A program made the translations under genes and the position numbers. Of a DNA stretch of 64,000 nucleotides, positions 21,916 through 49,600 are shown piece by piece. Where the stretch lies: the IMG/VR virus record IMGVR_UViG_3300034073_005389, positions 1 through 64,000 of that record. One strand, written 5' to 3'. Position 1 is the stretch's first letter. Each line of letters opens with the position of its first letter. The notes beneath the pieces are model-generated. The model saw only the letters and a program-made list of their open reading frames with translations, was not told the DNA's origin and searched no databases.

Positions 21916-22095
21916 TCAACCTACTTTAATATCAGAAATTAATTGCTTGAATTGTGATTCTTCTATTTCTACGGCATTAGTAATTTTTTTCAAAGGATTC
22001 TCATAATCCTTAGCAGAAATAACAATTACTATTTTGCCAGGAGTATCTGATTTTTTGCATTCAATATAGCTTTTATCATTAAATTCTATTTTCAT
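21916..22095 (-). CDS. Small hypothetical protein (59 aa), absent from the supplied track
   Basis: Manual translation MKIEFNDKSYIECKKSDTPGKIVIVISAKDYENPLKKITNAVEIEESQFKQLISDIKVG; ATGA overlap with the map stop; fills the gap exactly. Confidence 0.75.
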   Translation of the reverse strand: MKIEFNDKSYIECKKSDTPGKIVIVISAKDYENPLKKITNAVEIEESQFKQLISDIKVG

Positions 22096-23485: not shown

Positions 23486-24796
23486 CTATAAGATATTAGA
23501 AGCTAAAGTTGCTAACCTGCTTCTTTCACCTTTAGTAAAGGTAATATGCCCTGCTAATTCTGAATCTTTAAACTTTTCTATTGTATAAGAAAGTCCATTG
23601 TTAATGGCATCTAATTTATTATTATCAATCTGTTCGATGTCGCCTGTCAAGATAACTTTAGTTCCTTCACCGGCTCTTGTCAAGAGTGTTTTAATTTCAT
23701 CTTTAGATAAATTTTGAGCCTCATCAATTAAAATAATTGCATTGGGTATGCTTCTGCCACGTACATAAGCAATGGCATCCATTTCAATTTGACCTTTCTT
23801 TTGAAACATTTCTAAGTTTCTTTTCCAATCACCACTTTTGGTAGAAAATAATACTTCAAAACTATCCATAATTGCTTGAAACCATGGAGCTAATTTTTCT
23901 GATATATCTCCAGGCAAATAGCCAATGCCTGACCCCACCTCTTGAATTGGGCGGTAAATGATTAATTTATCATACTCTTTTTTATTTAGAACCAACTCAA
24001 TGGCAGAAGCTAGGGCTATTAAGCTCTTACCGGACCCGGCCTTTCCAATCAAAGTAACTAAATCTATATTTTTATCCATTAATAAATCAATGGCAAAAGT
24101 CTGCTCTTTGTTTCTAGGAGAAATGCTCCAAGGATAATGTTTTTTAATTGGCTTGATTTTATCAAATGACACTTTGCGACCCATGGCAATTCCATCGCCA
24201 TTTTCATTTTTAAATAAAACACATTCATTGGCTTGTAATTTTAAATTATATGCACGAGGATCAATACTATTGCTTTTCTGCAAATCTAATCCTGCAGCCT
24301 CATCAACTACTACTTGAAATCCTGTATATAATTCACTAAAAGAAGATGCTGCCCCTTCATGAGAAATAGCATCCAATCCACGAGCTTTGGCTTTAACTCG
24401 CAAATTAATATCATTGCTGACAAAGATTACATCTTTGGTAGGATGATTTTTTAAATTAGAAACTGCGCAAGCTAGAATTTGAGTATCTCCATAAGTTGGA
24501 TCTCCAAATCCAGCGAAATCTGGTAAATTTAAATCGTAATAAGTTGGGTCTACCTTTACTAAAACATCTTGCTCTTTAAGAAGTACTCCAGTACTAATAT
24601 CAGTTAACTCACTTAACTCATCTAATAATCTAATAGCTAATCTAGCTTTTTTAGCCGCATCACTAAAATCTTTTTTTAACTTATCTAATTCATTTAAAAC
24701 CGTAATTGGGATGACTACATCGCTATGATAAAATTGTTTGTAGGCACTTGGATCTTCCACTAAAACTGAAGTATCTAATATATATGTAGTTCTCAT
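23486..24796 (-). CDS. phoH: PIN-domain PhoH-family ATPase (PhoH2 architecture)
   Basis: N-terminal PIN (ILDTSVL, ELDKLK, D..IL, SNDINLRVKA); GKAGSGKS Walker A, RGRS, IIDEAQN, TGD..QID. Confidence 0.93.
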   Translation of the reverse strand: MRTTYILDTSVLVEDPSAYKQFYHSDVVIPITVLNELDKLKKDFSDAAKKARLAIRLLDELSELTDISTGVLLKEQDVLVKVDPTYYDLNLPDFAGFGDPTYGDTQILACAVSNLKNHPTKDVIFVSNDINLRVKAKARGLDAISHEGAASSFSELYTGFQVVVDEAAGLDLQKSNSIDPRAYNLKLQANECVLFKNENGDGIAMGRKVSFDKIKPIKKHYPWSISPRNKEQTFAIDLLMDKNIDLVTLIGKAGSGKSLIALASAIELVLNKKEYDKLIIYRPIQEVGSGIGYLPGDISEKLAPWFQAIMDSFEVLFSTKSGDWKRNLEMFQKKGQIEMDAIAYVRGRSIPNAIILIDEAQNLSKDEIKTLLTRAGEGTKVILTGDIEQIDNNKLDAINNGLSYTIEKFKDSELAGHITFTKGERSRLATLASNIL

Positions 24797-34304: not shown

Positions 34305-37076
34305 TCACTTTCTGCGATCTACTAATCCAGTTACCAACTTACCAAAAGATGAAGATTTTGCTGCAATTTTGTCTTTAATCTTCTGAGCAGCTGATACTGT
34401 TTCATTTACTCCAGTATCTAAGTTCAAAGTAAGATTTCTTGAATCATCTTTGTCTTTTACTTTAGATTGAAGTTCTTTAGTTTCTGCTTTTAGCTGTTCT
34501 ACACGAGAGTTAGGCAATCCTAGTCCAGAAAACATACTATATACTTTTACAGTGTCTGCAGCAGAATCTACTACATACATACCTTTAAATACTCCTTTAG
34601 GAGTGCCACATAGATCATTAATCATGCTACTAGCATAATTAATACTGGAGGCTGGAATCTTAGACCATACTTCTTTGTTAGCCACCACCATAAAACCAAC
34701 ATACTTAGACTGCTTTAAATCAAAACCGCTGGCTAATAAGTTTCCTGATAAGTTGTTAATAACAGCTTCAGCAATAGCTGTATCTTCTTGATAATTATCA
34801 ACAGTAAATTCCCCATATACTGAGAGACCTTCCCCATCAATAAATAACTTAGAGAATTCCATAGGGTCTAGTGCCTTAGTAGAAGAAGGCATGCTAGACA
34901 AAGTATTGAAAGCATCGATAGGATCGACAATGGCTTTATTAGCTACGCCATAAAAATCTACCTGACTTACGTTGTGATAAATTGTTTCAATCTTTGCGTT
35001 ATCTACTACAATAAGATTACTAACTCGTTTGCTTTGAGTAAGCTTAGCCAATTTAGCTAATGTCTCTAATGCATTAGATTTGGTCTGAGAATCTTCTGTA
35101 TCCATAGGAAGGGCAGCAATTACTACTAATGGCTTTCCCATATCTGCAAGTAAATCTACTAATGTTTCACAGGAGCCTGCTCCAGAGCCGCCACCTAAGC
35201 TAAGGCAGAGTAAGTGAACTTGGGCTGAGCTTAAACGATCATTAACTAATTGTGCAATTTGACCACGATGAGTTTCAGCAGCTGCTTTACCAATTTCAAT
35301 TTCTTTAGCAGCACCACCTAAGCCATATTCTAGAAGCAATTTGTTGCTATCAGGAATATCAATAAATTTTAGATCTTGTAAAGCAGTGTTAACCACACAT
35401 GCCTGATATCCTAATTTGTAAAAAGACTCGGCTAAGCGACTATTATGAGTAAATATGAATCCATTTTCTCCAGCAACATAATTTTCATATGTTTCTACTG
35501 TCAAATCAAAAAATTCATATTGATCATCTTCTGTATCAATTTTAATATTTTTAATATCAATCAGTTTAGGGGCGATGTCTGAAATATAACTCAATTGATC
35601 AGATTTATTTAAATTAGAAATCATATTTATAAATGTTGGAATTGACAAGTCTCTAACTCCAGCCACCCAATTTTTGATATTTAAATTTGTCTTTTTATAA
35701 AATTCATTTGGTCCACCAAAACCTCCTTCTTTAACTAAAACGTGATCAATGTCCTTATAATCAATAGGGACAATAGATGTTGTATAGCTTTTCTGTTTTT
35801 TAGTCAAATGATTAGATAGCCTGCTATGTTTTAATGTAGACTTTACATTATCACATAAAAAATCTGCCATTGGTCCGAAATTTAATTTACCATTTATAGA
35901 TATTTTAAATCCATCTTTTTCGTTATCTCTATTAGAAATACTATTTCTTAATGAAGATCTCCCACCAATAGAAGAAATTAAACATCCTAATTTACTAGCT
36001 AATGCGCTAGAAGTAGTATATACTTGAGCCTCGCACCAATCATCGCTTACAGTTCCATCAGCATCTATTAAGCCGGATAAAAATGCAGTTCTTACTTCTA
36101 ATGAAGCAGCAGAGACACAAGAAGGTACATCAATAGAGTACGTTTTATGACCAAATCCTCCATTAGTTTTTCCTACGTACATGTTAAAACAAGATTCAAT
36201 AAACAAACGGAATGAAAGACCAAAAACCTCTACTTGATCACATCCCGCTCTTTTATTAAGAGATATTGATGAATGAGGGATTAATGAACATACCTCAACA
36301 ATGTTTTTAGTTACATTTTCATCACTTGAATAAAATGATATGGAATTTCCATGTAATTTATCGTGACCATCCCCTGCAAAAACACCTAATAACCAAGCTA
36401 TTTTGCTATTTATTTCTATACCTCTAACATAGGTTTTTTGAGAAATTATATCAACAGGCTCTAATCTAGTATCTACTAGATTATCGCCAACAGATAATGG
36501 CTTACTATTACTTAATGAAGAAAAAAATGCTTTTCTTCTTGACATAGGTTTAAAAACTAAACTTGGATGTGTTTTTGAACATGAAAGACTTGTTCCATTG
36601 CTTAATATAATTTTATTTTTAATACTTTTTTTGTTTTTCCATACAGCTAAAACTTTTCCCTTTTTAATTTGACCAGTTTCTGGATCTATAGAAACAGTAT
36701 AAACATCTTTGTCTAATTCAATGCAAATATCATTATTTGCCTGCATTTTTATATTTTCTAATTTTGAACAATTTAATTGATTATAGAAAAAATCTTTAAT
36801 TGAAATTATTCCGTAATCAGAAAGATAAATATTGGTATTACCATCTATACATCCTGCCTGACCCGAACCTAATACACCTACTTGTAAACTTCTTTCTTTA
36901 GGTGCTACGATTTTTGCTGCCATTTTTGACTCCTGTTGTTTTGCTTGACTTTTCGCTTTTAGAGCGGCTAATTTATTTGTATCTATTGTATCTTCTGATG
37001 CCTTTACTTCTGCGGTTGAAATATTATCTACAACATTTTCGGGTTTATTTTCTTCTGTAATTGAAGTTGCTGACAT
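34305..37076 (-). CDS. Tubulin/FtsZ-superfamily GTPase (CetZ/TubZ-like) precursor interrupted by an intein; about 453 aa after splicing
   Basis: After removing residues 76-545: VGVLGSGQAG|SRLAE, VVNTA.QDL, LSLGGGSGAG (tubulin signature), ALP...E, IVVDN, LDPMEF (T7-like); AAGGAG SD before the ATG. Confidence 0.92.
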   Translation of the reverse strand: MSATSITEENKPENVVDNISTAEVKASEDTIDTNKLAALKAKSQAKQQESKMAAKIVAPKERSLQVGVLGSGQAGCIDGNTNIYLSDYGIISIKDFFYNQLNCSKLENIKMQANNDICIELDKDVYTVSIDPETGQIKKGKVLAVWKNKKSIKNKIILSNGTSLSCSKTHPSLVFKPMSRRKAFFSSLSNSKPLSVGDNLVDTRLEPVDIISQKTYVRGIEINSKIAWLLGVFAGDGHDKLHGNSISFYSSDENVTKNIVEVCSLIPHSSISLNKRAGCDQVEVFGLSFRLFIESCFNMYVGKTNGGFGHKTYSIDVPSCVSAASLEVRTAFLSGLIDADGTVSDDWCEAQVYTTSSALASKLGCLISSIGGRSSLRNSISNRDNEKDGFKISINGKLNFGPMADFLCDNVKSTLKHSRLSNHLTKKQKSYTTSIVPIDYKDIDHVLVKEGGFGGPNEFYKKTNLNIKNWVAGVRDLSIPTFINMISNLNKSDQLSYISDIAPKLIDIKNIKIDTEDDQYEFFDLTVETYENYVAGENGFIFTHNSRLAESFYKLGYQACVVNTALQDLKFIDIPDSNKLLLEYGLGGAAKEIEIGKAAAETHRGQIAQLVNDRLSSAQVHLLCLSLGGGSGAGSCETLVDLLADMGKPLVVIAALPMDTEDSQTKSNALETLAKLAKLTQSKRVSNLIVVDNAKIETIYHNVSQVDFYGVANKAIVDPIDAFNTLSSMPSSTKALDPMEFSKLFIDGEGLSVYGEFTVDNYQEDTAIAEAVINNLSGNLLASGFDLKQSKYVGFMVVANKEVWSKIPASSINYASSMINDLCGTPKGVFKGMYVVDSAADTVKVYSMFSGLGLPNSRVEQLKAETKELQSKVKDKDDSRNLTLNLDTGVNETVSAAQKIKDKIAAKSSSFGKLVTGLVDRRK
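35442..36851 (-). mobile_element. Intein (470 aa) with a LAGLIDADG homing endonuclease, in the tubulin gene
   Basis: N-terminal CIDGNT (Cys1 = residue 76), block B SCSKTHP, LAGLIDADG motifs WLLGVFAGDG and FLSGLIDADG, block F FFDLTVETYENYVAG, C-terminal IFTHN followed by Ser+1. Confidence 0.95.
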
Positions 37077-37102
37077 TATATCTCCTTAATAACATTATTT
37101 AA

Positions 37103-38068
37103 TCATTTAAAGAACCATTGGTTGTTTAAATACCATTGGATCGTTTCAGCTATTCCATCTTTAAACTTATAGTTTGGCTTCCATCCTAGTTTTCTAACTT
37201 TAGAAGAATCTACTGAATACCTAAAATCATGACCACTACCACGAGGGTCTTCAACATGACTAATTAAATCATGACCTTTTTGCATTACATTGCATATTTT
37301 TTGTACTACTTCAATATTAGAAAGTTCTTGATTGGAAGAAATATTATATATTTGATTATTTTCCCCCTGATTAATTACTTGAAATAAAGCAGAACAATTA
37401 TCATAAACATGAGTCCAATCTCTAATTTGTAGACCCTGACCATATATAGGTATTTTATTTCCTTCTAAAATAGATTTGATTGTCTTAGGTATTAATTTCT
37501 CAGGGGTTTGTCTAGGTCCATAATTATTAGAGCTTCGAGTAATATTATAATTTAATCCAAATGAATGATGGGCAGCTTTTACTAATAACTCTCCAGCAGC
37601 TTTTGTTGCTGCATATGGGTTTCTTGGATTAAGAACATTTTCCTCTGACCAAGAAGCTTCATTTTCGCTTTGAAGCTGACCATATACTTCATCTGTGGAT
37701 ATGTAAACTAATTTGTCTATTTTATATTTTACGCAAGCATTAATAATAACTTGTGTACCTAATACATTAGAAGTTACGAACGAATTTGGCTGTGTCAAGG
37801 AGGTGTCTACAAAAGTTTCTGCCGCACCATGCAAAACTACATCTGGTTTTTCAAATTGAAAAATAGTATCTATTACATGCTGATCTCGAATATCAGCAAT
37901 ATGAAATGTATGATTTTTATTCCAATACATAGAGTTAATACTATTATAGTTAACTCGATCTACACTAACTAATGAATATGGCTGTTTTTCATATACTGCC
38001 TTTCTTAAAAAGTTAGACAATATAAATCCACAAGAACCAGTGCATAATAATTTAATTCTATCTTTCAT
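37103..38068 (-). CDS. rfbB: dTDP-glucose 4,6-dehydratase-like NAD-dependent epimerase/dehydratase (RmlB/RfbB family)
   Basis: HGAAETFVD.S, NVLGT, STDEVYG, PRNPYAATK (YxxxK), SNNYGPRQ.PEKLIP, RDWTHV.D, GHDFRY; Rossmann motif is atypical (TGSCGFILSN). Confidence 0.88.
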   Translation of the reverse strand: MKDRIKLLCTGSCGFILSNFLRKAVYEKQPYSLVSVDRVNYNSINSMYWNKNHTFHIADIRDQHVIDTIFQFEKPDVVLHGAAETFVDTSLTQPNSFVTSNVLGTQVIINACVKYKIDKLVYISTDEVYGQLQSENEASWSEENVLNPRNPYAATKAAGELLVKAAHHSFGLNYNITRSSNNYGPRQTPEKLIPKTIKSILEGNKIPIYGQGLQIRDWTHVYDNCSALFQVINQGENNQIYNISSNQELSNIEVVQKICNVMQKGHDLISHVEDPRGSGHDFRYSVDSSKVRKLGWKPNYKFKDGIAETIQWYLNNQWFFK

Positions 38069-38894
38069 ATTTATATAGATTATACTTAGGATTAATAATA
38101 TATTTTTTCTGATCTAACATATATCGGTTTGCCCATTTTTTTCTAAAATGAAAAATATTATGACCAAAAAAAAGTAAATTGGCAGGATTCTTTTTTAAAG
38201 AATAACTAGATTCATGAAATATATTGGTCTTACCACAATATACAATATCATAATTCATATTGTATTTGATGTTTAAACATAAATCTACATCATCAAATGA
38301 CCAATGATATTGCTCATCCATACCACTAATACCAGAGCGATTTGTTTTGCAAGACTCTTTATATAAATTAGTTCTAGTCAATAGAACAGCACCAGTTACG
38401 CTTTGGAAAAGTCTATTTTTTTCTGCCTGCTCATCATTTGGTTGTAAATCTTTAAAATTAAATGGCAGCTGGTCTATATCATTAAATATAATTCCGGCAT
38501 GTTGTATTTTATTAGAATTTAAATATAATAACCTAGCTCCTACCACACCCACTTTACTATTTTTTTTAATGATGTCAATCATATTTTTAATCGAATTAAC
38601 ATCATTAAAAACAATGTCATTGTTTAACAACAACATTAAATCTTTGTCATTTGGTTTGGCAGTTTCTACTAAAAAGTTCATCCCCTCAGCAAAATTTTGA
38701 TTATTATTTTTATATGGAATAACATGAATGTTTTTGCCCCAATGAGATGCTACACTCAACGTATTATCAGTAGAATAATTATCTTTAATAAACCACTCAT
38801 AATCAATATCTTTTAAAGCAGGTATTAAAGATTCTTTGAGACGAGTTAATTTATCTAAAGCATTCCAAGTTAAAGTAAAAATATTTACTTTCAT
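38058..38894 (-). CDS. Glycosyltransferase family 2
   Basis: LLLNNDI (DxD-like), VVGARLLY, QHAG, VTGAVLL, DDVDLCL, FHESS. Confidence 0.88.
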   Translation of the reverse strand: MKVNIFTLTWNALDKLTRLKESLIPALKDIDYEWFIKDNYSTDNTLSVASHWGKNIHVIPYKNNNQNFAEGMNFLVETAKPNDKDLMLLLNNDIVFNDVNSIKNMIDIIKKNSKVGVVGARLLYLNSNKIQHAGIIFNDIDQLPFNFKDLQPNDEQAEKNRLFQSVTGAVLLTRTNLYKESCKTNRSGISGMDEQYHWSFDDVDLCLNIKYNMNYDIVYCGKTNIFHESSYSLKKNPANLLFFGHNIFHFRKKWANRYMLDQKKYIINPKYNLYKYER

Positions 38895-39895
38895 AAACCA
38901 ACTCGAACTCCTGCCATAATTTTTACATTCGCATCAGTACCTACATGCACCGATGGTCCTAAATAAAAATTTTTCATAAATGGTAAATGTTGCCCAACAT
39001 TATAAGCAAATGGTGTCAAACTAAATTGAAATGTCTGACTTACTACCCCATATCCAACACCTACCTGTAATACAGAAAAATCTGGAGTGTTTAAATATCT
39101 ACCATAAGACATAATCCCTAGATTAATAGAGGGGGCAAATTCTCCTTGCACCGGATTTAAAGCCACACCTCCATCTAAGCCAACAAACAATCTTGGATTC
39201 CAAAAACTCCATTTAGCCTCTGGATACTGTTGCTTTGTAGTAGTTTGAACTGGGATCTCATATTCTTTATCATCTACTCTAAGAGTGACTCTGTTATACA
39301 CGTAAGTTTTCTCATTTTCATCTACCCCAATTACTGTGCCTAATTTATATTGTCTTGGCTTAATCTCTACATACCATGGATTTTCTTTCCAGGCACTAAA
39401 TCCAACCTTACCTAAAGGAACAGTAAACTTTCCAAAATTCTCTTCTAAATCACGAATTTGCTGCTGCTTTAAATATCCAAACACGTCTATGGCAGGGCAC
39501 ATACCATCTTTGCATTCAGATGGTTTATTGTTTGGGTTATAAGCAGGATTTGCTTCTCCTACCCCACTGCTAGGAAGATTGTATTCTTTTTGACCTAAAC
39601 TTTGAAAAATAACAAAATTAGCAGCTACAATATCTGCCTGTAATTTATCTAAATCATTTTTCACAGCATTGTAATTAATACCATTGTTATTAACAAAGCT
39701 TTCTAAATCTTTCTTAGTAGCATACTCTGTTTGGCTACGAAAAATGCCATCTACAAGCTCTTTTTGCTTAGTAACTTGATCTTCAATGTTCTTTTGACGC
39801 TCAGACATTTCAACTACTTTAAAAGTAATTAATGCAAGAGCTGTTAATACTATCAACACGCTAGCTATAATAATAGCTTGTAGATACTTTGGCAT
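38891..39895 (-). CDS. Membrane-anchored hypothetical protein: N-terminal TM helix, coiled coil, C-terminal amphipathic beta-strands
   Basis: Residues about 5-27 hydrophobic; heptad-like region follows; alternating Gly/aromatic strands end in MAGVRVGL. Confidence 0.7.
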   Translation of the reverse strand: MPKYLQAIIIASVLIVLTALALITFKVVEMSERQKNIEDQVTKQKELVDGIFRSQTEYATKKDLESFVNNNGINYNAVKNDLDKLQADIVAANFVIFQSLGQKEYNLPSSGVGEANPAYNPNNKPSECKDGMCPAIDVFGYLKQQQIRDLEENFGKFTVPLGKVGFSAWKENPWYVEIKPRQYKLGTVIGVDENEKTYVYNRVTLRVDDKEYEIPVQTTTKQQYPEAKWSFWNPRLFVGLDGGVALNPVQGEFAPSINLGIMSYGRYLNTPDFSVLQVGVGYGVVSQTFQFSLTPFAYNVGQHLPFMKNFYLGPSVHVGTDANVKIMAGVRVGL

Positions 39896-39901
39896 ATTTC
39901 C

Positions 39902-40747
39902 TCACTTCTGTACGTCAGGGCACCAATGAATTGTCCTGCCTTCTGGCGTAGCCTCTGTCTTTACTATGTTGCCCAACGGGTCTTGCTTGTTTCCATACAC
40001 TCTAAAGAAACTAGAATAGTTCCCTTCTTCTCCATATACATTTGTATATGTATGTAGAGTGGCTCCCTGATATTGGTATGATTCTTGCATCACGGTAACA
40101 ATATCTTGACATAAACTATTAATCTCATTGTACATCAATTTATTGCCAGGTCTCCAAGGAGAAATTTTAGATAAATATAACGCTTCAGCTCTTATATAAT
40201 TACCAACTCCTGCAAAAATAGATTGATCCATCAATAACTGACCAATTGGTTTATCACTATTTAATTTTTTATGAATACGATTCTTATAATCATTATAATT
40301 GTCTTGTAAAGGATCCCATCCTAAGCTTTTTAATTTTTTCTCTAAAGCTTGTTTGCCTTTAACAAACTTAATTGTTCCAAAATGTCTGGGATCATTAAAA
40401 TACAGCTTGCTCGTAGTTCCATCTTTATCTTCTAAGTCTATAATAAAACATGGATGCTTGCCTTCTTTTGGGCTCCATTGACCTGTCATGCCATATGTAC
40501 AAAACATATACCAATCATTGGTAAATGTCCAATACATAAACTTACCTTTTACATTAACATCTATGATAGAGATTGGATTATGTTTAAATAAGTATCTTTC
40601 TTGCAAGAATTCAAACATACCCTCTACTGTAGAAGTAACTTTGCCATATCTTCCATTTAAGGTAGGTGAGGCGTCTATTACTTTTTTATCTATGGCAAAA
40701 ACTTTAATAAATCCGGCTGATAATCTTAATTCTGGACCTTCGGGCAC
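39902..40747 (-). CDS. Fpg/Nei-family DNA glycosylase
   Basis: N-terminal (M)PEGPE, GK, YGMTG, F.DPRHFGT, H2TH LMDQSIFAGVGNYIRAEALY; GTG start with AAGGAG SD. Confidence 0.93.
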   Translation of the reverse strand: MPEGPELRLSAGFIKVFAIDKKVIDASPTLNGRYGKVTSTVEGMFEFLQERYLFKHNPISIIDVNVKGKFMYWTFTNDWYMFCTYGMTGQWSPKEGKHPCFIIDLEDKDGTTSKLYFNDPRHFGTIKFVKGKQALEKKLKSLGWDPLQDNYNDYKNRIHKKLNSDKPIGQLLMDQSIFAGVGNYIRAEALYLSKISPWRPGNKLMYNEINSLCQDIVTVMQESYQYQGATLHTYTNVYGEEGNYSSFFRVYGNKQDPLGNIVKTEATPEGRTIHWCPDVQK

Positions 40748-40770
40748 AAAAATCTCCTTATTGGGAGATC

Positions 40771-40798
40771 ATCTTAATTTTATTAAATTAGATGTCAA
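40771..40798 (-). promoter_or_regulatory. Sigma-70-type promoter upstream of the Fpg/Nei gene
   Basis: Minus strand TTGACA (40798-40793)-N16-TAAGAT (40776-40771). Confidence 0.72.
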
Positions 40799-41493
40799 CT
40801 CTTGTGCAATCTCTTTCTTAGCCTGGGTGCCCATTTTTTAAAAAATATTTCTTTGGCTGATGTATATAGCTGTTGAGTATTTAATTGCCGACTGCTAATT
40901 TTACCAAAATGAACCACAGGAATATCAATTACTTTAAATGGTACCTGTAATTCTCTAGCTCTAAAAGAAAGATCAGTATCTTCAAAATAACAAAAGAACT
41001 CTTCACTAAATATTTCATTATTAGAAATATCTAATTTCTTCCACATACTCTTAGAAGAAGCTAAACACCAACCACTCATATAAGACAATCCATCTAGATA
41101 TTGATTCGCTTCTTTTACAAAAGAAAAATTATAAGCTAATTGACCCATAGTAGGTCCTACTAAAAATTCAGGACAATGTTTAATTAGTTCTTGAGTCCAA
41201 TTACTATGATTTTCTTTTACTCTGATATCGTTGTTTAAAAACAATACATTTTCAGAACTAGATTCTGCATATCCTTTATTACAAGCTTTAGCAAATCCTT
41301 GATTAACACTATTTCTAATATATTTTATTTCAGAAGAATCTTTTAATTGAGACTCTGTCTCATCTGAACTAGCATTATCTACTACAATGATTTCATGATC
41401 ATTAGGCAGTTTTGATAAATCATTTAAACAACTTTTAGTAAAGTTAAATTTATTAAATACAGGTATTACAATAGATAGTTGTTTCATTGGCAT
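40795..41493 (-). CDS. Glycosyltransferase family 2
   Basis: LSIVIPVFN, IIVVDNASSD, N.GFAKACN.G, FLNNDI, FEDTDLSFRA. Confidence 0.9.
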   Translation of the reverse strand: MPMKQLSIVIPVFNKFNFTKSCLNDLSKLPNDHEIIVVDNASSDETESQLKDSSEIKYIRNSVNQGFAKACNKGYAESSSENVLFLNNDIRVKENHSNWTQELIKHCPEFLVGPTMGQLAYNFSFVKEANQYLDGLSYMSGWCLASSKSMWKKLDISNNEIFSEEFFCYFEDTDLSFRARELQVPFKVIDIPVVHFGKISSRQLNTQQLYTSAKEIFFKKWAPRLRKRLHKS

Positions 41494-42605
41494 CTTTCTA
41501 ACATTTTATTTACTATATTTTTCCAAGAATATTCTTTATATAAATTAACTATGTTATTTTGAATTTTTTTATTCATTTCAACATAATTTTCTTTAGCAAA
41601 TCTAAGTTTATCTACCGCATCATCTACAGAAGGCTTAAACCAAATTGCATTTTGCTTAGACTCCCAATACATACTAGTAGGATCTGCTCGTTCTTCTTTT
41701 CCACTAATTAATAATGAATTATCTTTATTCAAGAAATCTATTTGACCTCCCCAGTTAGGCGCAATTGCTAACTTACCAGAAATAATAGACTCTAATCCAG
41801 GAAAATAAAAACCTTCACAATGCGACATTGTGACGCAGGCATCTACACTTCTATACAAAGAAGAAATGTCTGGTAAAAATTCTGAAAATATTTTTACTTC
41901 AGCATGTTTTGGATATTTTTGTTTAAATTCAGACAAGCACTGATTTAAAGATACTTCAAATTGAGCTTTGACTGGCTTATCTTTTCCCTTTAATATTAAA
42001 CATACATCATCTTTATTAGAAAATGTTTTACCATATGCATCTAATAATCCTTTTAAATTTTTTCTTTTATGATTTTGAGCAATATTAGCTAATAATTTAA
42101 ATGATTTGTCTGTTGGCAACTTTATTTTAGAATTTCCTAAATATGTAATGTCTACTCCATGAGGAATTACATCTACGTGCGATTCTGGCACGCCAGAATC
42201 TAAAAAGATTTGTTTAGCAAAATTAGATGGGGCAAAGATTTTATCGCAAGATTTATAATGTTTAGCAAATCCTGTGGGCAGGACATTTTTACCAGCCCAT
42301 TCATAGCACCAAATACCAAATCGGTTCTTTTTGCCATGAGCTAAATTAAATGGAAAATTTTTCATGGCAGTATAACTGATCTGACAATCATAATCCTGAT
42401 CAGGAATTCTGCCATAAACGTCAGCTTTATTTTCTTCTACATACCCAATTACACTATTTAATAAATGCTTTGGAGTATGCTCCACCGCATCTGTGGAAAA
42501 TACATCTACCTTATGCCCTAAGGTTCTTAGAGCTTCTGTAATCCCCCAGCCACAATTTGCCCAAGAATGATTTTTTCCATAAAATTGCTTCAATAAAATC
42601 TTCAT
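41484..42605 (-). CDS. Glycosyltransferase family 4 (GT-B)
   Basis: VIPHGVD, RKN...LL.AY...F....DV.L..K, SHCEGFYFPGLES, WGGQIDF. Confidence 0.88.
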   Translation of the reverse strand: MKILLKQFYGKNHSWANCGWGITEALRTLGHKVDVFSTDAVEHTPKHLLNSVIGYVEENKADVYGRIPDQDYDCQISYTAMKNFPFNLAHGKKNRFGIWCYEWAGKNVLPTGFAKHYKSCDKIFAPSNFAKQIFLDSGVPESHVDVIPHGVDITYLGNSKIKLPTDKSFKLLANIAQNHKRKNLKGLLDAYGKTFSNKDDVCLILKGKDKPVKAQFEVSLNQCLSEFKQKYPKHAEVKIFSEFLPDISSLYRSVDACVTMSHCEGFYFPGLESIISGKLAIAPNWGGQIDFLNKDNSLLISGKEERADPTSMYWESKQNAIWFKPSVDDAVDKLRFAKENYVEMNKKIQNNIVNLYKEYSWKNIVNKMLERCQ

Positions 42606-42648: not shown

Positions 42649-45600
42649 TCAAATTGGAGTAGGTGATGGTAGATATGGTACAAAATTCCAGCTATGAGCA
42701 ATAGGGGGTGAAGCTGCATATGGATTGTCATATGTCATTACCAATCTTGCCATCTTACAGATAGCCGCATCTAATCCAGGAGCGCCTGTATTTAAACTTA
42801 AATGTATTTCATATAAGAAATCACTTGCGCCAATATTTAACAAAGTCTTAATATCGTCTGAAGCTAAATATGTAGCAGCAGTATTTAAAGTAGATAATAT
42901 AGGTCCACCACCAGAAATATTAATATAAGATGCATTAGCAATGTCATACAACTGGATTTGTGCATCTAGGGCTGCATTAGTGGTTTCTAATATTACTTCT
43001 AACTTAATAGTGCTTAATCCTTGTAAAATATAATTATCAAATCTGAAGGGGAAAGCGCCAATTACTGTAGGAGAGTTATTATCATTAGAATAAATACCAG
43101 CTGTTCCATAAATATAAACAGGATTCTTATACATAAAGCTTGGATCTAATAATCCATAGCCATCTGTCTTTGGAATCTTATCTGCATCAGGAATGCCTAA
43201 CGAGAAAGGTATTACTCCAGGTAAACTAGTTATAAACTGATAGCTTAATCCGCTACCTGTGCTCATTAATACTGTTCCAAATACGCCTACGCTATTTAGT
43301 CCTGTACCGCCATGTACAATAGGAAGTATCCCAGTAATATCTGTAGCCAAATCTACAAGAGCAGAAGGACCTCCATCTACAGCCCCGCTAAACACGCTAA
43401 TTAATTTTAGCATATTTTGTAATTTAGTAGAATCTACGAATAGTGGTCGATTGTTAAATCCACCTTTTTTAAGGTAAACACTTACTTGAATTTTTGTGCT
43501 TAATGTTTTTAACACTTCATCTTGAAACAAGTTAGTAAAGTTTAGTGTTAACAAGCCTGTAGAATAATCAATTGATACACCAATTTTACCATCTACAATT
43601 GCTCCTGAATATCCATCATTGCTCAAACCATTTGTATTAGGAGAAAATGACTGTACAGCTACTGAGAATCTAATTTGATCTTTGGCTAAAGCATCTGCTT
43701 TTACAAAAGAACAGTCGGCAAATCTCATGGCAGGAAAGCCTAAACGGGTTACGCCATTATTGGTGTAATCAGCAATAAAATCATCCATAATATTGATGGT
43801 GCGTTCTGTTCCAAATAATCCATCTGGAACTTCTAGAACTAGAGTACCAACTTCAAAATCTACTTTATAAAAATTACCATCTGGTCTATGAAGTTCTCCC
43901 CCATCTCCTAGAATAATATTATCTGGAGCAAATACATCTACTCTACCAGAATTAAAATCAGGTTTACTACCATATACATTACATAGAATTCCTTGTATAT
44001 TGCATTCATTTTTAACAAATCCTGATAATGTAGTAAATACGCTAGGTACTTGTTTTGCTCTACTATTAGTGACAATTAAAGACTCGGTCCAAGTTAATTG
44101 TTTTTCAAACACTAAAGCTGATGGGCTAGTATAAAAATCATGCGAAGCAAAGTAGTATCCGTCATTCAAGAAAACATCTTGTAAAGGATGTATAGTCGTA
44201 GAGCGACCTATAGTAACAGGTGAATAATCATCTGCTCTATCTACAAATTTTTCTACTTTAATTCTTATGACGTTAAAAGGGGTACCGATTTTGGTATAAG
44301 CGTTAGTTGCTGGGGCTGGATAAGTAGTAGTTCCAGATGTAGTAAGAGGAAAACGATCAATATAGTTTTGCAACAAATAACCATCATTAGCTGTAACTGC
44401 AAAATCTCCGTCAATATCTGCTCTTAGCATCTGACCTAATACGTCGCCTGTTAAATATATTTTTCTAAGTGTTAATACATCTGTATTGGAAGTAATGCTA
44501 ATAATGTCGAATCCACCATTATTCTCAGGATTAGAAGGCGCTAAGACCACTAATTTATAAGAGCTTAAACCAATAATTGTATTAAAATTAACGGTAGCAC
44601 TAGTAAATTGAGCTAATCTAGGATTGGTAGGGCTAGCTACTAGCACGCCATCTGTACCAGAAGCTACAACCAAACTAGTAGCAGTATCTACTAATTGAAA
44701 TGAAACATTAAAAATATTGGTAAATGGCTTTATATAAGTTGTATAACCATTAGTAAATGTAGTAATGTATCCATCTGTATTAATAATTGTATTTTGTGGT
44801 AACCCTACATTTAAATTATAGTTTAAATAAGTGTTTAATAACACTAAGTCTTCATCTGTAATTAGCCCATCGCCATTTACATCTCCAACTAACATAGAGC
44901 ATAGTTTAGCATCTGCTATTCTATAGAAGATGTTTGGATCAGAGTAATTTGGATATATTTTGGCGCCATTTAAATCACCGTTAAGTAAATTTGTAACTAA
45001 GCTAGTTACAGAGTTATCAAATCTAACTACATCAGTAGGATCATCTACTATTCTGATAAGAATTTCATCTTCAGCTAATGTGGCGCTAAATAATTTAGAC
45101 ACTATTTGCGCTGAAATAGCGTCGTAATATTTTCTATTTTTATCAGAAATAGCTCCAACTAATAATGGCTCTGAAGCTGTTTCTAAATTTGCAATTTCTA
45201 AACTATTTAGCAATTTAACATCTGGCACAATTTCTTGTCTAGATAAAACAGGATTCCCTGTTCTTTGATCTGGCACAGGCGTTGTCTTATCTGTTACCGC
45301 TTGAACAACAGCACGATATACATCGTTGCCAGTAAATTGTAAATTTTGCAGACAGTAATCAATTGTAGCCTGAGAGGCTGTATCTAAAATAGTTTTAGGC
45401 AGAATCATCCCTAAACCAGAATCATAAGCTTGTCCATCTGACATTTTAGCAGCATCTGTCCAAATGCTAAACCACAAATCTTCGTCTGGTAAATCTACCC
45501 ATAATGTACCAGTAAATACTGTAATTCTAGAATCTTTTACAGTATCATTACCGCTAGTAACTAAAATATCACATTTATTTGCTGCGCCAGATCTTTTAAT

Positions 45601-46668
45601 GGTGAAAGCATAGTAATTACCGGGTACAATTACGTTTCCACCAGCTACTGTACTATTACTAAAGATAAAGTCCACTGGTTGAGGAACGCTATCTAATACA
45701 GTACCAGCGGCTTGCAAACTGCCATAGTTAACACTTAGTTGTGCTAATGGAATATTAGATGGAGGAAATTCAATTTGAAGATTAGGGGCAATGTCAGTAG
45801 GACAATTTAAATTAGACTGTAAAGGATAAATACTAATAATTAAGTCGCCAGTCCATGCTAAGTCATTTTCATACCCTACTTCTTGATTTCTAACAGATAG
45901 TAGCAAAGTAAGTTTTTGTATATTATTAGTGGTAGCTACAAACTTTTGACCAAGTTGAGTGGTCACATCATTTAAATATAATATTTTATTTTCTTTACCA
46001 GTTGTATAAATATTTAAAGAATCTACATTGTATAATGGTAAAGCGGTTTGTATTAAATTAATAACAGAGCCATAGCCATCTACATAACCATCAACAAAGA
46101 AGTCTCTAAAAAATAGATTTGGCTCTACTGTCTGAGATACCATGACAGGGTTTCTTGACAAAGTCAATGGATTGGCATCTTTAATTATAATTTGACCACC
46201 TAAATTTAAAGATAATTCTGGATTACCAATAAAATCATTAAAAAGTAATAATAATATTTTAGTAAAGTGCTTAACACTTACTTGAGATTCATTGGTTTGG
46301 AAAACAAATGTCTCATATTGTAAGTTAGATTGAAAATCTAAACCAATAACACATACTTTAACAGTTCTTTTACCTGCGGCAGCAGAACCAGTCAAAGAGA
46401 TTTCTAATTGATTTCCTAAATTATTATCTGATGGTTGATTTTGAGTAAAAATAGCAACGCCATCTAAAAATCCTGTTTGAAGCAAAGAATCAAACAAGAT
46501 TCTAGGCACTAAAGATTCAGACAATACGCCATTACCAATGTGATTATTTATAATACCAGCATTAATAGTAGTATTATATGTTTGCTCTAAAGATAGATCA
46601 GTAGCATCTACTTGCTGAGCATCAAACCAAATATTTTGTTCTGCGGAGATAGGAGTTCTTTTAGTCAT
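42649..46668 (-). CDS. Large virion structural protein (1339 aa) with two dockerin/EF-hand-like Ca-binding repeats
   Basis: GDVNGDGLITDEDLVLLNTYL and ADIDGDFAVTANDGYLLQNYI; ILP...GGTG fibre-type motif near the C-terminus; co-transcribed with baseplate genes. Confidence 0.7.
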   Translation of the reverse strand: MTKRTPISAEQNIWFDAQQVDATDLSLEQTYNTTINAGIINNHIGNGVLSESLVPRILFDSLLQTGFLDGVAIFTQNQPSDNNLGNQLEISLTGSAAAGKRTVKVCVIGLDFQSNLQYETFVFQTNESQVSVKHFTKILLLLFNDFIGNPELSLNLGGQIIIKDANPLTLSRNPVMVSQTVEPNLFFRDFFVDGYVDGYGSVINLIQTALPLYNVDSLNIYTTGKENKILYLNDVTTQLGQKFVATTNNIQKLTLLLSVRNQEVGYENDLAWTGDLIISIYPLQSNLNCPTDIAPNLQIEFPPSNIPLAQLSVNYGSLQAAGTVLDSVPQPVDFIFSNSTVAGGNVIVPGNYYAFTIKRSGAANKCDILVTSGNDTVKDSRITVFTGTLWVDLPDEDLWFSIWTDAAKMSDGQAYDSGLGMILPKTILDTASQATIDYCLQNLQFTGNDVYRAVVQAVTDKTTPVPDQRTGNPVLSRQEIVPDVKLLNSLEIANLETASEPLLVGAISDKNRKYYDAISAQIVSKLFSATLAEDEILIRIVDDPTDVVRFDNSVTSLVTNLLNGDLNGAKIYPNYSDPNIFYRIADAKLCSMLVGDVNGDGLITDEDLVLLNTYLNYNLNVGLPQNTIINTDGYITTFTNGYTTYIKPFTNIFNVSFQLVDTATSLVVASGTDGVLVASPTNPRLAQFTSATVNFNTIIGLSSYKLVVLAPSNPENNGGFDIISITSNTDVLTLRKIYLTGDVLGQMLRADIDGDFAVTANDGYLLQNYIDRFPLTTSGTTTYPAPATNAYTKIGTPFNVIRIKVEKFVDRADDYSPVTIGRSTTIHPLQDVFLNDGYYFASHDFYTSPSALVFEKQLTWTESLIVTNSRAKQVPSVFTTLSGFVKNECNIQGILCNVYGSKPDFNSGRVDVFAPDNIILGDGGELHRPDGNFYKVDFEVGTLVLEVPDGLFGTERTINIMDDFIADYTNNGVTRLGFPAMRFADCSFVKADALAKDQIRFSVAVQSFSPNTNGLSNDGYSGAIVDGKIGVSIDYSTGLLTLNFTNLFQDEVLKTLSTKIQVSVYLKKGGFNNRPLFVDSTKLQNMLKLISVFSGAVDGGPSALVDLATDITGILPIVHGGTGLNSVGVFGTVLMSTGSGLSYQFITSLPGVIPFSLGIPDADKIPKTDGYGLLDPSFMYKNPVYIYGTAGIYSNDNNSPTVIGAFPFRFDNYILQGLSTIKLEVILETTNAALDAQIQLYDIANASYINISGGGPILSTLNTAATYLASDDIKTLLNIGASDFLYEIHLSLNTGAPGLDAAICKMARLVMTYDNPYAASPPIAHSWNFVPYLPSPTPI

Positions 46669-46674
46669 AGTATT

Positions 46675-49600
46675 TCATCTAGTATACTGTATAAACACCT
46701 TACTGTTGGCTGGCTTCAGCACTTTTATTAACTTTTCTAAAGCAGCCTGGACTTGTGGGCTACTATTAACTATACCAAAGCTATCAAGAATATTAACAGT
46801 AAAATCAAAATAACCATTATTTCTGTTTTTTAATACCGAAAAGTCAGTATTTAATTTAACTAAAGTGTCAAAGTTTAATAAATAAGTAGTATACAAGTCT
46901 GGTGTTACTGGGAATGCCATTTGTAAGTTACTATTATAGTTGACATCAATAGGATCTCCATATGGAGCATAAATAGGTCTAGAAATATCACTTATTCTGA
47001 GATTATCTATTAATGAGAATATTGGGCTAGTCTGATCATATTGCGCTCCAATAAACAACTCATTAATTGGGTCTTTAAACTTTATATTTGGTAATATCTC
47101 ATATCCATCCTTAAACCCAGGGGTAGCTAAATAGATAGGAGCTTTATTCTTTTCTGTAAACAATATCCTAGAATATTGATAACCATCTAAAAATAATCTC
47201 ATTTCATCAAAGCCAGTACTGCTATTTAACTTATAACTAGCTTTAACTCTATGCCATGTATTTTTAGACCAAAAAATAGGAGCTTTTACCGTATAATTAT
47301 TTTCAGATGCAGTAATTGAAAAATTCATATACCCAAGTTTGTCTTTAAAGATAGATAGCCTATCTCCTTGTAATCCCTGAGGAATATAATTTACGATTAC
47401 TTGAGAATTTTGATTTGGTAATTTTCTATTTAACCTAATTACCTGAGTATTTATTTTTGTATTTTGATTTTCTACTGGTTTATAAGTAATTAACAATGGC
47501 AAATTAGAGGCGGGTAAAACTTTACCTAAATAAATTGTTTTTCTATCTGGACCAATTGCACCATTATTAAAATAATCAGTGTTAGTCAAATCTCCAATAA
47601 TTTGAACTTTAACTACCTGCAAAATATTTTTAGCAGTAGTAACAGAACTATTTCCAATACTTAACGCTTCTTCTTGAATTGCATTTTGAGTGTCTATTTC
47701 TACTTTGCCTCCTACAAAATAATCTATTGCAGGATCTCCATATTTTAACTTAACACTTAAGACTTGAGAAATTGGAGAATTAATTTTAATAGATACATTA
47801 TCCACACTTACAGCATCTTCTAATACCGCTCCGTATGCGTCAAAGTAATATCTTTCATTTGGATCATTACCTGTATCAAAAATAGGATTCATCCAAAATT
47901 CAACAGTACCTTCTTTTTTAGTGTCTAGAATGCCATCATTAGATAAAATGATAGGCTTATTTAATAACACAATGCTATTTCCAAAATTTTCATTTACTAC
48001 GATTGAAGACTGAAAATAATTCTTTAATTCTGAAGTATTCGTATAATAATCAGAATTATTAGTAAATGGATATGTATCAAAACTTAATAACATTAAAGTG
48101 TTAGCATCTTTTCTTAAAGGCTTTAAAGAGTTGTAATCTTTAGTTATAGATCTTTGGTTATTAGGAATTGTTTCTCCTACTCTAGTATCAGTTAACATCA
48201 CCGAGTATATTTTTACTTGATCTACTATGCCATTAAACTGATGAGTACCTTTAAAATTAGATCCTAAATACACTTGCATATTAAGTGGCGGCATTTTAAT
48301 TTTTGTATAAGTACTATACTTTAGCTCATAAAACCCACTAGATAAATAATATGCTTGGCTTGGTAATTTATTTACTTGGAAAGTAAAGAACCCATTTTGC
48401 AATCCACTTCTATAATCTGTTGTTTTTACTATCTGATAGTAGCCGTCTACAAAGTTAGGTACTGGTAAAGGTGGTGCGGCTGTACTGGGTTGTACCGTTA
48501 AAGATAAAAGGTCTGGCGATACATCCGTTATTACATAGTAACCAGCAGGGGCAATAGGATAGGTAATTATTAAATAATTATTTATATATTCTGTGCTAAA
48601 TGCATTGTAACCATCTGTTACAATATCATATCCGTCTTTGTATAAAGAAATTCCATCATTAATTATATAACTATATTTAACTACTGGGGCTAATCCGCTC
48701 AACTCAGCATAAGTCATAGAGTATTTTTCTTTAGCTTCTATAGTCAACGCTGGTTTCAAAGTATTAATTGGCTTCGCATTTACTTGAATATAATTTACAG
48801 AAAGGTATGGATTAACAAAATTAAGAGTGCCATAATCTGTAAAAGTAATTGTTTCGCTTACAGTAACAATTCCAGTTAAACCATTAATAGTTACTGTGAC
48901 TGGAGTAGAAAAATCAGTATTATTACCAGCAATAGTAACAGCTATTGTTCTGCCGCTTTGTGAATTGGTTGGCTGAGATGTTGTTAAGTTATTAGAAACA
49001 AATACATTTCCAACTAAAGTAGAGTTGGATGGACCAATTGGAACTACAGGAAGTATTATTTTTTTAATTATTGCTTCATCTAAAGAAATAGGGGCAGGTA
49101 ATCTGGTCCTAATAATATTTTCTACGTTATTTCCCCACACATAATATTTATGTGTAAAATTTCTGTAATTTAATCCCAATAATCTAACTAAAATTAAATC
49201 CTCTGCAAAAACATCATTAGAAATAGTTAAAATATTATTGTAATTAATATCTTTAGAGACAGAGTAAGATGGATCTACTGCTCGTAACCCAGGTATTTCA
49301 GTTTCTGCGGGTGCATAAACTTGAAATTGTGCATTTGTTAGCGAAATAGGCAGATTGTCCGTAATTGTAACTGTATTTCCAGATACTTGCACAATATTAT
49401 AACTAATTTCAAAATTTGGATTATTAACTCTAATTAAATAACCTGGTAATACTCCTTGATTTTGAAAATTATAAGAAGCAGAAGAAATAACATTAGAACC
49501 TACATTAGTAATAGCATCAGATCCTTTGAAAATAGGGCTAATGGTACTTACAGTAATATTAGAAGCTATATCTATTTCAGAAGTTACTGTAAACTGAGTT

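What the first reader, a model, noticed from the sequence alone, without database searches (positions are those of the whole stretch)
34305..37076. A phage tubulin whose GTP-binding T1 loop is split by a full homing-endonuclease intein
Seen: the ORF reads VLGSGQAG-[C...470 aa...THN]-SRLAE. Removing 35442..36851 restores a contiguous tubulin/FtsZ fold with GQAG, NTA..DL, GGGSGAG, ALP..E, VVDN and a DPMEF T7-like loop. The intein has both LAGLIDADG motifs and canonical Cys1/His-Asn/Ser+1 splice residues. Established: inteins concentrate in conserved nucleotide-binding motifs of replication and recombination enzymes, terminases and RNR. I do not recall a described intein in a tubulin/FtsZ-family protein. 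Inference: filament assembly cannot start until splicing occurs, so the intein could act as a conditional switch for the phage cytoskeleton, and the endonuclease could attack intein-free relatives during co-infection.
Basis: partly seen in the sequence, partly recalled or inferred. Interest (0 to 1): 0.85.

Follow-up and report, generated by a model that had tools for sequence, protein, structure and literature searches.

The report
Homing intein inside a huge-phage tubulin
A roughly 361-366 kb phage carries a tubulin-like (TubZ-type) gene whose GTP-binding loop is interrupted by a complete self-splicing, self-spreading intein; this is an ordinary kind of selfish element in a host protein family where I found none described.

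Summary
ORF 34305..37076 (-) encodes 923 aa: a 75-aa N-extein ending GSGQAG, a 470-aa intein (35442..36851; Cys1, His-Asn end, Ser+1, two LAGLIDADG motifs) and a 378-aa C-extein. Pfam, PDB sequence search and two AlphaFold models identify a TubZ-like tubulin plus a PI-PfuI/VMA-type intein with an endonuclease.

Related phages carry intein-free genes that read GSGQAG-SR(L/I)AE without a break, in the same gene neighbourhood. At least 17 diverged alleles carry the same intein at the same site. Intein-bearing and intein-free alleles are interleaved on the extein tree. The exteins are under very strong constraint (dN/dS 0.03) and the intein under moderate constraint (0.26). So the intein must splice, and its endonuclease is probably maintained.

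The best explanation is a canonical selfish homing intein in the T1 phosphate-binding loop.

The same tubulin family also carries inteins at a second site, the T4 GGG|(S/T)G signature loop. I found no paper describing a natural tubulin/FtsZ intein. Verdict: a new host family for a known kind of element, of moderate interest.

The parts
37082..37087 (-). Shine-Dalgarno AAGGAG, 5 nt upstream of the ATG
   Evidence: Read directly from the sequence.
36852..37076 (-). N-extein, residues 1-75. It has a low-confidence N-terminal tail, strand S1, and the T1 loop GSGQAG at 36852..36869.
   Evidence: In the AlphaFold precursor model the S1 strand is E66-71.
35442..36851 (-). Intein, 470 aa (residues 76-545): a Hint splicing domain with a LAGLIDADG homing endonuclease domain inserted in it.
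   Evidence: Pfam PF14890, PF14528 and PF05204. PDB sequence hit to PI-PfuI 1dq3, 2e-12. Foldseek hits to 1dq3 (E 1e-28) and to the TliVMA intein 7qss (TM-score normalised to the target 0.82). GC 28.7% against 36.5% in the exteins.
36834..36851 (-). Intein block A, CIDGNT, with the Cys1 nucleophile
   Evidence: C1 is invariant in 12 aligned inteins.
36558..36584 (-). Intein block B, SCSKTHPSL, with the block B histidine
   Evidence: S92 and H95 (intein numbering) are invariant. This stretch aligns with block B of PI-PfuI.
36363..36398 (-). LAGLIDADG motif 1, AWLLGVFAGDGH
   Evidence: G160, D161 and G162 are invariant in 12 inteins.
36048..36083 (-). LAGLIDADG motif 2, FLSGLIDADGTV
   Evidence: D263, D265, G266 and T267 are invariant.
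35442..35513 (-). Intein blocks F and G: FFDLTVETYENYVAG...NGFIFTHN, ending in His-Asn
   Evidence: D449, H469 and N470 are invariant. The alignment to the C-terminus of PI-PfuI has E 6.5e-6.
34308..35441 (-). C-extein, 378 aa, starting with Ser+1 (SRLAE). It holds the rest of the tubulin GTPase domain, with T4 GGGSGAG at 35175..35195, the VVDN motif at 34998..35009 and the T7-like LDPMEF at 34854..34871. It also holds the TubZ-like C-terminal domain and a basic tail (34308..34382).
   Evidence: Pfam PF00091 and PF22453. PDB sequence hit to RepX/TubZ 4ei7, 1.8e-14. Foldseek hit to TubZ with TM-score normalised to the target of 0.76. Motif coordinates.
34305..34307 (-). Stop codon
34253..34286 (-). 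Terminator-like hairpin with a 14-bp stem followed by a T-run, just after the stop codon

Best explanation
The gene encodes a TubZ-like phage tubulin of a roughly 361-366 kb phage. A canonical class-1 intein carrying a LAGLIDADG homing endonuclease has invaded it in frame.

The insertion lies between the last Gly of the T1 phosphate-binding loop (GQAG) and the Ser that starts helix H1.

Inferred mechanism:
1. The 923-aa precursor is translated.
2. The Hint domain carries out the standard four-step splicing reaction. Cys1 makes an N-S acyl shift, Ser+1 attacks, the terminal Asn cyclises with help from the penultimate His, and an O-N shift follows.
3. This releases a 453-aa tubulin with a restored GSGQAG-SRLAE loop, plus a free 470-aa endonuclease.
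4. When the phage co-infects a cell with an intein-free relative, the endonuclease cuts the empty GQAG|S site. Repair then copies the intein in. This is homing.

The element is selfish. It persists at this site because the site is invariant and the host protein is needed.

Shown: the architecture, the residues, the folds, the empty-site alleles, the patchy distribution and the selection pattern. Inferred: the splicing itself, the cutting, and what the tubulin does for the phage.
For: Architecture and domains.

Splice residues and endonuclease acidic residues: C1, H95, D449, H469, N470, and D161 and D265 in the LAGLIDADG motifs, are invariant in 12 inteins that are only 31-64% identical to this one.

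Folds:
- The precursor model has pLDDT 83. It matches PI-PfuI and the TliVMA intein, and also TubZ 4ei7 and 2xka.
- The intein-free orthologue L010 models with pLDDT 89.6 and pTM 0.83. Its best match is TubZ (E 5e-25; TM-score normalised to the target 0.75-0.80).

Empty site: 19 distinct intein-free DNA alleles read GxGQ(A/G)G|SR... without a break. They lie in the same epimerase-tubulin-UvsW-helicase neighbourhood.

Same site in all intein-bearing alleles.

Distribution: intein-bearing and intein-free alleles are interleaved on the extein tree. The tree needs 8 changes, at least 4 of them forced by well-supported branches. In the DNA-based set it needs 4, at least 2 forced.

Selection, window against P0001: C-extein dS 1.46 and dN/dS 0.03; intein dS 1.08 and dN/dS 0.26; endonuclease core 0.28. 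The tubulin has therefore stayed functional through long co-residence with the intein, which requires splicing. The endonuclease is not decaying freely.

Specificity: a search with the intein alone finds only tubulin hosts.

Not an assembly artefact: the exact protein lies on 6 contigs.
Against: Nothing here tests splicing or DNA cutting directly.

The window and P0001 inteins have a dS similar to that of their exteins. In that pair the intein was inherited vertically, so recent homing is not demonstrated for this particular allele.

The intein/extein tree conflicts used groups chosen after the trees had been seen, and one of the reciprocal tests was not significant.

The excess of AGY codons at Ser+1 in intein-bearing alleles could mark co-conversion. 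It loses significance once relatedness is controlled for, because only 2 independent pairs remain.

No TubR-like partner or centromere was identified beside the gene, so the tubulin's job is unknown.
Confidence: 0.85

Rival explanations
1. The intein has been co-opted as a conditional switch. Splicing would depend on a cue in the infected cell (redox state, temperature, metal ions or a binding partner). The phage tubulin would then become able to polymerise only at a set time in infection.
For: The insertion interrupts the T1 phosphate-binding loop, which lies at the longitudinal filament interface in tubulin/FtsZ polymers (established structural knowledge). The precursor should therefore be unable to accept a subunit on that face. 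The intein has persisted for a long time in some lineages (dS above 1 with the intein retained). Several cysteines are conserved: C43 is nearly invariant, C204 is invariant, and a Cys four residues before the block B His is present in 10 of 12 inteins. Conditional splicing is known for other inteins (my own knowledge; not tested here).
Against: Most close relatives do without the intein. In IMG/VR the counts are at least 12 intein-free against 3 intein-bearing, and most of the best-scoring 50%-identity cluster representatives are intein-free. So the intein is not needed for this tubulin to work. Patchy gain and loss together with a retained endonuclease is the signature of a selfish element. 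No residue pattern specific to a known conditional intein was tested.
Confidence: 0.08
2. The intein still splices, but its endonuclease is inactive. It would then be a vertically inherited passenger on its way to being lost, not an actively homing element.
For: The intein and extein of the window and P0001 show similar synonymous divergence. Intein identity tracks extein identity across pairs (r = 0.85). The phylogenetically controlled test for co-conversion had no power.
Against: The endonuclease core has dN/dS 0.28, not near 1. Both LAGLIDADG acidic residues are invariant across 12 inteins, down to 31% identity. All alleles keep the full length of 461-473 aa, and none is a mini-intein. The intein data strongly reject one grouping that the extein tree favours (p-AU 2.5e-13).
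Confidence: 0.06
3. The insertion does not splice. The gene would be a disabled tubulin, or a fusion protein with a new function, or an assembly chimera.
For: No direct splicing evidence exists.
Against: The exteins are under very strong purifying selection in two intein-bearing alleles (dN/dS 0.03). All splice residues are invariant. The same architecture recurs in at least 17 diverged alleles from independent samples, and the exact protein lies on 6 contigs.
Confidence: 0.01

Closest known systems
PI-PfuI (the Pyrococcus furiosus ribonucleotide reductase intein, PDB 1dq3) and the VMA-type inteins PI-SceI and TliVMA (7qss)
   Same: All are bifunctional inteins: a Hint splicing domain with a double-motif LAGLIDADG endonuclease inserted in it. 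They are similar in size (about 430-470 aa), start with Cys1 and end in His-Asn. Each sits in a nucleotide-binding site of an essential enzyme. PI-PfuI is the best sequence hit (2e-12). The fold matches have E 1e-28 and TM-score normalised to the target of 0.73-0.82.
   Different: Sequence identity is only 18-19%. The host here is a tubulin-family GTPase in a phage, not an archaeal or yeast ATPase or reductase. The +1 residue here is Ser.
TubZ/RepX of Bacillus plasmids pBtoxis and pXO1 (PDB 2xka, 4ei7), and TubZ of Clostridium phage c-st
   Same: This is the best structural and sequence match for the extein. Shared features are the Pfam TubZ-like C-terminal domain, a long C-terminal helix and a basic tail.
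   Different: Identity is only 17-23%. No TubR or tubC partner was seen next to the gene. The gene lies between a sugar-modification cluster and the replication genes of a huge phage. The T1 motif here is GQAG. None of the solved TubZ proteins that matched carries an intein.
[quoted passage not shown]
   Same: It is a tubulin-superfamily protein encoded by a very large phage, so a role in organising the infected cell is plausible.
   Different: Similarity is marginal: PDB sequence E 0.017, PHROG PhuZ 1e-5 over about 80 residues, and no tblastn hit in 50,697 phage records. The tail here is basic, whereas I recall PhuZ's as acidic (own knowledge). No PhuZ intein is described.
Phage inteins in the terminase large subunit, DnaB or other helicases, DNA polymerase and ribonucleotide reductase
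   Same: Same biology: homing inteins sitting in conserved nucleotide-binding loops of essential phage genes. Relatives of this phage carry such inteins in ribonucleotide reductase, a UvsW-like helicase and NDP-sugar epimerases.
   Different: The host protein family is different. I found no published tubulin/FtsZ example. The 2016 survey by Novikova et al. does not mention FtsZ, tubulin or GTP in its main text.

Membership tests
Intein (class 1, canonical) | An in-frame insertion in a conserved host protein whose intein-free homologues are continuous across the site | tested here: met
   Intein-free alleles read GSGQAG-SR(L/I)AE. All intein-bearing alleles are interrupted at the same peptide bond.
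Intein (class 1, canonical) | An N-terminal Cys or Ser nucleophile (block A) and the block B histidine | tested here: met
   C1 and H95 are invariant in 12 inteins.
Intein (class 1, canonical) | C-terminal His-Asn (block G), the block F Asp, and a Ser/Thr/Cys at +1 | tested here: met
   D449, H469 and N470 are invariant. Ser+1 is present in every allele.
Intein (class 1, canonical) | Hint fold | tested here: met
   Pfam Intein_splicing 4e-12. The AlphaFold model matches PI-PfuI and TliVMA.
Intein (class 1, canonical) | Protein splicing activity | not testable with these tools
   Only indirect evidence: extein dN/dS is 0.03 between two intein-bearing alleles.
LAGLIDADG homing endonuclease (double-motif, intein-borne) | Two LAGLIDADG motifs, each with the catalytic acidic residue | tested here: met
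   AWLLGVFAGDGH and FLSGLIDADGTV are present. D161 and D265 are invariant.
LAGLIDADG homing endonuclease (double-motif, intein-borne) | Endonuclease fold | tested here: met
   Pfam LAGLIDADG_3 and Hom_end. Full-length structural alignment to 1dq3 and 7qss.
LAGLIDADG homing endonuclease (double-motif, intein-borne) | Site-specific cutting of the empty allele, and homing | not testable with these tools
   The indirect evidence is consistent: a patchy distribution and dN/dS 0.28 in the endonuclease core. The tree conflict and the Ser+1 codon bias are suggestive only.
Tubulin/FtsZ superfamily | The T1 glycine-rich loop and the T4 signature GGGTG(S/T)G | tested here: met
   GSGQAG and GGGSGAG are present. 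G72, G75, G629, G630 and G632 are invariant in 52 sequences.
Tubulin/FtsZ superfamily | A T7 loop with acidic residues for GTP hydrolysis in the next subunit | tested here: inconclusive
   N724 and D737 (in LDPMEF) are invariant in the family alignment. Their equivalence to the T7 loop was judged from position, not from a residue-level superposition.
Tubulin/FtsZ superfamily | Two-domain tubulin fold | tested here: met
   Pfam PF00091. Foldseek matches to TubZ, CetZ and FtsZ.
TubZ family (type III partition tubulins) | TubZ-type C-terminal domain, long C-terminal helix and flexible tail | tested here: met
   PF22453. Helix 856-884 followed by a basic tail. The best PDB matches are TubZ and RepX.
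TubZ family (type III partition tubulins) | An adjacent TubR DNA-binding adaptor and a tubC centromere | tested here: not met
   The neighbours are an NDP-sugar epimerase and a UvsW-like helicase, and the upstream gap is only 26 nt. No dedicated search for a distant TubR or for repeats was made.
PhuZ family | Sequence membership in the PhuZ group | tested here: not met
   PHROG PhuZ 1e-5 over about 80 residues only. PDB PhuZ E 0.017. No tblastn hit in the phage collection.

The most novel reading that the evidence does not exclude
The tubulin inteins of these huge phages are more than passengers. Because the insertion sits in the nucleotide pocket at the filament's growing interface, the unspliced precursor could bind a filament end through its intact lower face and cap it. 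Regulated splicing would then give the phage a built-in timer, or a poison-and-antidote control, for its cytoskeleton. The recurrence of inteins in two different GTP-binding loops (T1 and T4) of the same family would then reflect selection as well as target conservation.
Probability: 0.08. Interest if true: 0.8.

Novelty: new member of a known kind. Interest (0 to 1): 0.5.

Why it matters
This adds the tubulin/FtsZ superfamily to the list of proteins that host inteins. It also extends the rule that inteins settle in nucleotide-binding loops from ATPases and polymerases to a cytoskeletal GTPase, at two loops (T1 and T4).

It gives a natural pair of alleles, with and without the intein, in closely related huge phages. 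That pair could be used to test homing between phages. It could also supply a splicing-dependent on-switch for tubulin-like polymers.

It also points to a large, unstudied family of TubZ-like tubulins in huge phages. These genes sit next to, and are sometimes fused to, glycosyltransferases. The biology of the intein itself is ordinary.

Tried and rejected
- blastn and tblastn of the gene and the C-extein against 50,697 deposited phage genomes found nothing. No cultured or deposited relative is available.
- I first suspected that the window intein had been swapped relative to P0001, because the exteins are 93% identical and the inteins only 64%. I rejected this. The nucleotide identity profile and the dS values show that both parts are about equally old, and that the intein simply evolves faster at the protein level.
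- The Ser+1 codon bias (AGY in 8 of 10 intein-bearing alleles against 1 of 18 intein-free) looked like a co-conversion mark. The raw Fisher test on the first 7 intein-bearing and 19 intein-free alleles gave p 0.002. Only 2 phylogenetically independent pairs exist, so it is not significant.
- Tree conflict tests gave mixed results. The intein data reject (win, P0001, P0002), and the extein data reject (win, P0003, P0005). The reciprocal tests gave p 0.10 and 0.14, and I chose the groups after seeing the trees.
- Seven literature searches found no natural tubulin/FtsZ intein: six on intein plus PhuZ, TubZ, FtsZ or tubulin terms and one broader query.
- The PHROGs library did not recognise the intein at all.
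- The window holds no other intein.
- Distances between cysteines in the model could not be measured, because the coordinates are not exposed.
Full report
**1. The observation**

The minus-strand ORF 34305..37076 is open for 923 codons. It has an AAGGAG ribosome-binding site 5 nt upstream of the ATG and a 14-bp terminator-like hairpin right after the stop codon.

The sequence reads ...VLGSGQAG | CIDGNT ... GFIFTHN | SRLAE... Cys1 is residue 76 and the terminal Asn is residue 545.

Pfam finds Tubulin (1e-13), TubZ-like_C, Intein_splicing (2e-11), LAGLIDADG_3 and Hom_end, all above the curated thresholds. The intein DNA is more AT-rich (28.7% GC) than the exteins (36.5%).

**2. Where it comes from**

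The window belongs to JGI metagenome 3300034073. The contig is Ga0310130_0000007, 366,373 bp. The IMG/VR copy is 361,490 bp.

The window carries these phage genes:
- a baseplate J-like protein and tail-fibre-like proteins;
- a UvsW-like helicase, a DnaB helicase and a DnaC-like loader;
- both ribonucleotide reductase subunits;
- a PhoH-like protein.

This is a huge tailed phage. No deposited phage genome resembles the gene at DNA or protein level.

**3. What the two parts are**

By sequence, the C-extein is closest to RepX/TubZ (4ei7, 1.8e-14), then to FtsZ. PhuZ is marginal at 0.017. PHROGs gives only weak partial matches.

The intein is closest to PI-PfuI (2e-12), matching blocks B, F and G.

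An AlphaFold model of the whole precursor has pLDDT 83.4. It matches the following (TMt is the TM-score normalised to the target):
- PI-PfuI: E 1e-28, TMt 0.73;
- the TliVMA intein: TMt 0.82;
- TubZ 4ei7: E 1e-20, TMt 0.76, rmsd 2.6.

The spliced sequence itself could not be submitted, so I modelled the natural intein-free orthologue L010:6001-7362. It is 454 aa and reads GVLGSGQAGSRIAEAF. The model has pLDDT 89.6 and pTM 0.83. The insertion point falls between strand S1 and helix H1, which is the T1 loop. Its best matches are TubZ protofilament structures (E 5e-25, TMt 0.75-0.80), then CetZ and FtsZ.

That test is passed.

**4. Relatives with and without the intein**

A search with the C-extein, among proteins of precursor length, found ten intein-bearing homologues of 917-940 aa. 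Their C-exteins are 51-95% identical to the window's. It also found intein-free ones.

All intein-bearing proteins are interrupted at the same bond (GQAG|C...HN|S). All intein-free ones read GQAG-SR without a break.

A search with the intein alone found only tubulin hosts and added five more alleles. IMG/VR holds two further intein-bearing contigs of 354 kb and 131 kb.

An exhaustive search of 1.84 billion cluster representatives gave 944 relatives. Most of the best-scoring ones are intein-free proteins of about 440-475 aa. One distant member, P0111, has only 28% extein identity and carries the same intein at the same site.

In IMG/VR, at least 12 close relatives (56-79% identity) are intein-free, against 3 intein-bearing.

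The intein-free allele P0004 and the intein-bearing alleles P0001, P0011 and P0181 all lie in the same neighbourhood: glycosyltransferases, an NDP-sugar epimerase, the tubulin, then a UvsW-like helicase. They are therefore orthologues.

**5. Is the intein alive?**

Twelve inteins align end to end at 461-473 aa, and none is a mini-intein. The following residues are invariant even at 31% identity:
- C1;
- the block B Ser and His;
- the block F Asp;
- the terminal His-Asn;
- both LAGLIDADG acidic residues.

Between the window and P0001, synonymous divergence is high in both parts: 1.46 in the C-extein and 1.08 in the intein. dN/dS is 0.03 for the C-extein, 0.26 for the intein and 0.28 for the endonuclease core.

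Two inferences follow. First, the tubulin stayed under strong constraint while it carried the intein, so the intein must splice well in vivo. Second, the endonuclease domain is not decaying neutrally.

**6. Is it mobile?**

On the extein tree, intein-bearing and intein-free alleles are interleaved. The tree needs 8 changes, at least 4 of them forced by well-supported branches. For example, P0005 (with the intein) is sister to P0004 (without it). A second tree built from DNA-backed alleles needs 4 changes, at least 2 forced.

The counts cannot separate gain from loss. The pattern is what a homing cycle predicts.

The intein tree places the window's intein with those of P0003 and P0005. The intein data reject the grouping (win, P0001, P0002) that the extein tree favours (p-AU 2.5e-13). 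The extein data reject (win, P0003, P0005) (p 0.003). The reciprocal tests were not significant, and I chose the groups after seeing the trees. I treat this as suggestive.

The Ser+1 codon is AGY in 8 of 10 intein-bearing alleles and TCN in 17 of 18 intein-free alleles. This could be a co-conversion mark, but it has no power once relatedness is controlled.

**7. Mechanism**

The best explanation is a canonical selfish homing intein in the T1 loop. The splicing chemistry is inferred from the invariant residues. Homing is inferred from the endonuclease domain, the empty sites and the distribution.

The nucleotide pocket lies at the longitudinal interface of tubulin-family filaments (established structural knowledge). 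A 470-aa domain at T1 should therefore prevent the precursor from accepting the next subunit.

Nothing indicates that splicing is regulated. Most relatives lack the intein, so I give the switch idea about 8%.

**8. Wider pattern**

Eight other cluster representatives of this tubulin family carry a LAGLIDADG intein at a second site, inside the T4 signature loop: GGG(G)|C...HN|(T/S)G(S/G)G. One of them again follows an NDP-sugar epimerase.

These T4 inteins resemble the T1 intein much more (up to E 1e-27 over the full length) than the ribonucleotide reductase or epimerase inteins of related phages do (E 0.003 or worse). This hints that the intein moved between the two glycine-rich loops.

**9. 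Novelty**

Literature searches found no natural intein in FtsZ, tubulin, TubZ or PhuZ. Reviews of jumbo phages mention inteins only in other genes. The survey by Novikova et al. never mentions FtsZ, tubulin or GTP in its main text.

The source databases name these proteins only 'cell division GTPase FtsZ' or 'CetZ'. I could not query InBase.

The element is a standard intein, so I rate this a new member of a known kind, with interest about 0.5.

Noticed in passing
P0076, P0078, P0082, P0093, P0105, P0148, P0178, P0179 (relatives); the equivalent site in the window is 35175..35195: The same tubulin family has a second intein insertion site, inside the T4 signature loop: GGG(G)|C...HN|(T/S)G(S/G)G. 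Pfam confirms Intein_splicing and, in seven of the eight, LAGLIDADG_3. These inteins resemble the T1 intein (up to E 1e-27) far more than ribonucleotide reductase or epimerase inteins of related phages do. The window's own T4 site is uninterrupted.
   Followed up: partly
P0014-P0027, P0053; L062:6001-8445: About 800-aa proteins fuse an N-terminal GT1 glycosyltransferase domain (PF00534) to this tubulin (42-45% identity to the C-extein). They lie in the same genomic position, on contigs up to 205 kb. The fusion suggests a functional link between the tubulin and glycosylation.
   Followed up: partly
window 37103..42605: The tubulin gene sits directly downstream of a sugar-modification cluster: an NDP-sugar epimerase/dehydratase, two GT2 and one GT1 glycosyltransferases, with an Fpg/Nei DNA glycosylase among them. 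The epimerase-tubulin pairing is conserved in every related locus I examined.
   Followed up: partly
L006:4685-6946 and L006:18904-22338; L039:5390-5784; L040:2847-5033: Related phages carry further inteins or large insertions. These are in an NDP-sugar epimerase (753 aa, with Intein_splicing and a faint LAGLIDADG hit), a ribonucleotide reductase large subunit (1144 aa) and a UvsW-like helicase (919 aa). A 728-aa split epimerase has no intein hit on record. The window's own copies of these genes are uninterrupted, and the window has no other intein.
   Followed up: partly
window 35439..35441 and the same codon in L002-L043: The Ser+1 codon is AGY in 8 of 10 intein-bearing alleles and TCN in 17 of 18 intein-free alleles. 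This may be a co-conversion mark or a cleavage-resistance mark. It is not significant after controlling for relatedness.
   Followed up: yes
window 23486..24796; 4397..5428; 22092..22892: Auxiliary genes in the window: a PIN-PhoH fusion, an IMP dehydrogenase/GMP reductase-family protein and an M24 metallopeptidase.
   Followed up: no
window 42649..57902: Three very large consecutive ORFs of 1339, 2378 and 1363 aa. The third begins with a baseplate J-like domain. The second has only a weak concanavalin-like lectin hit. They are presumably baseplate or tail-fibre proteins.
   Followed up: no
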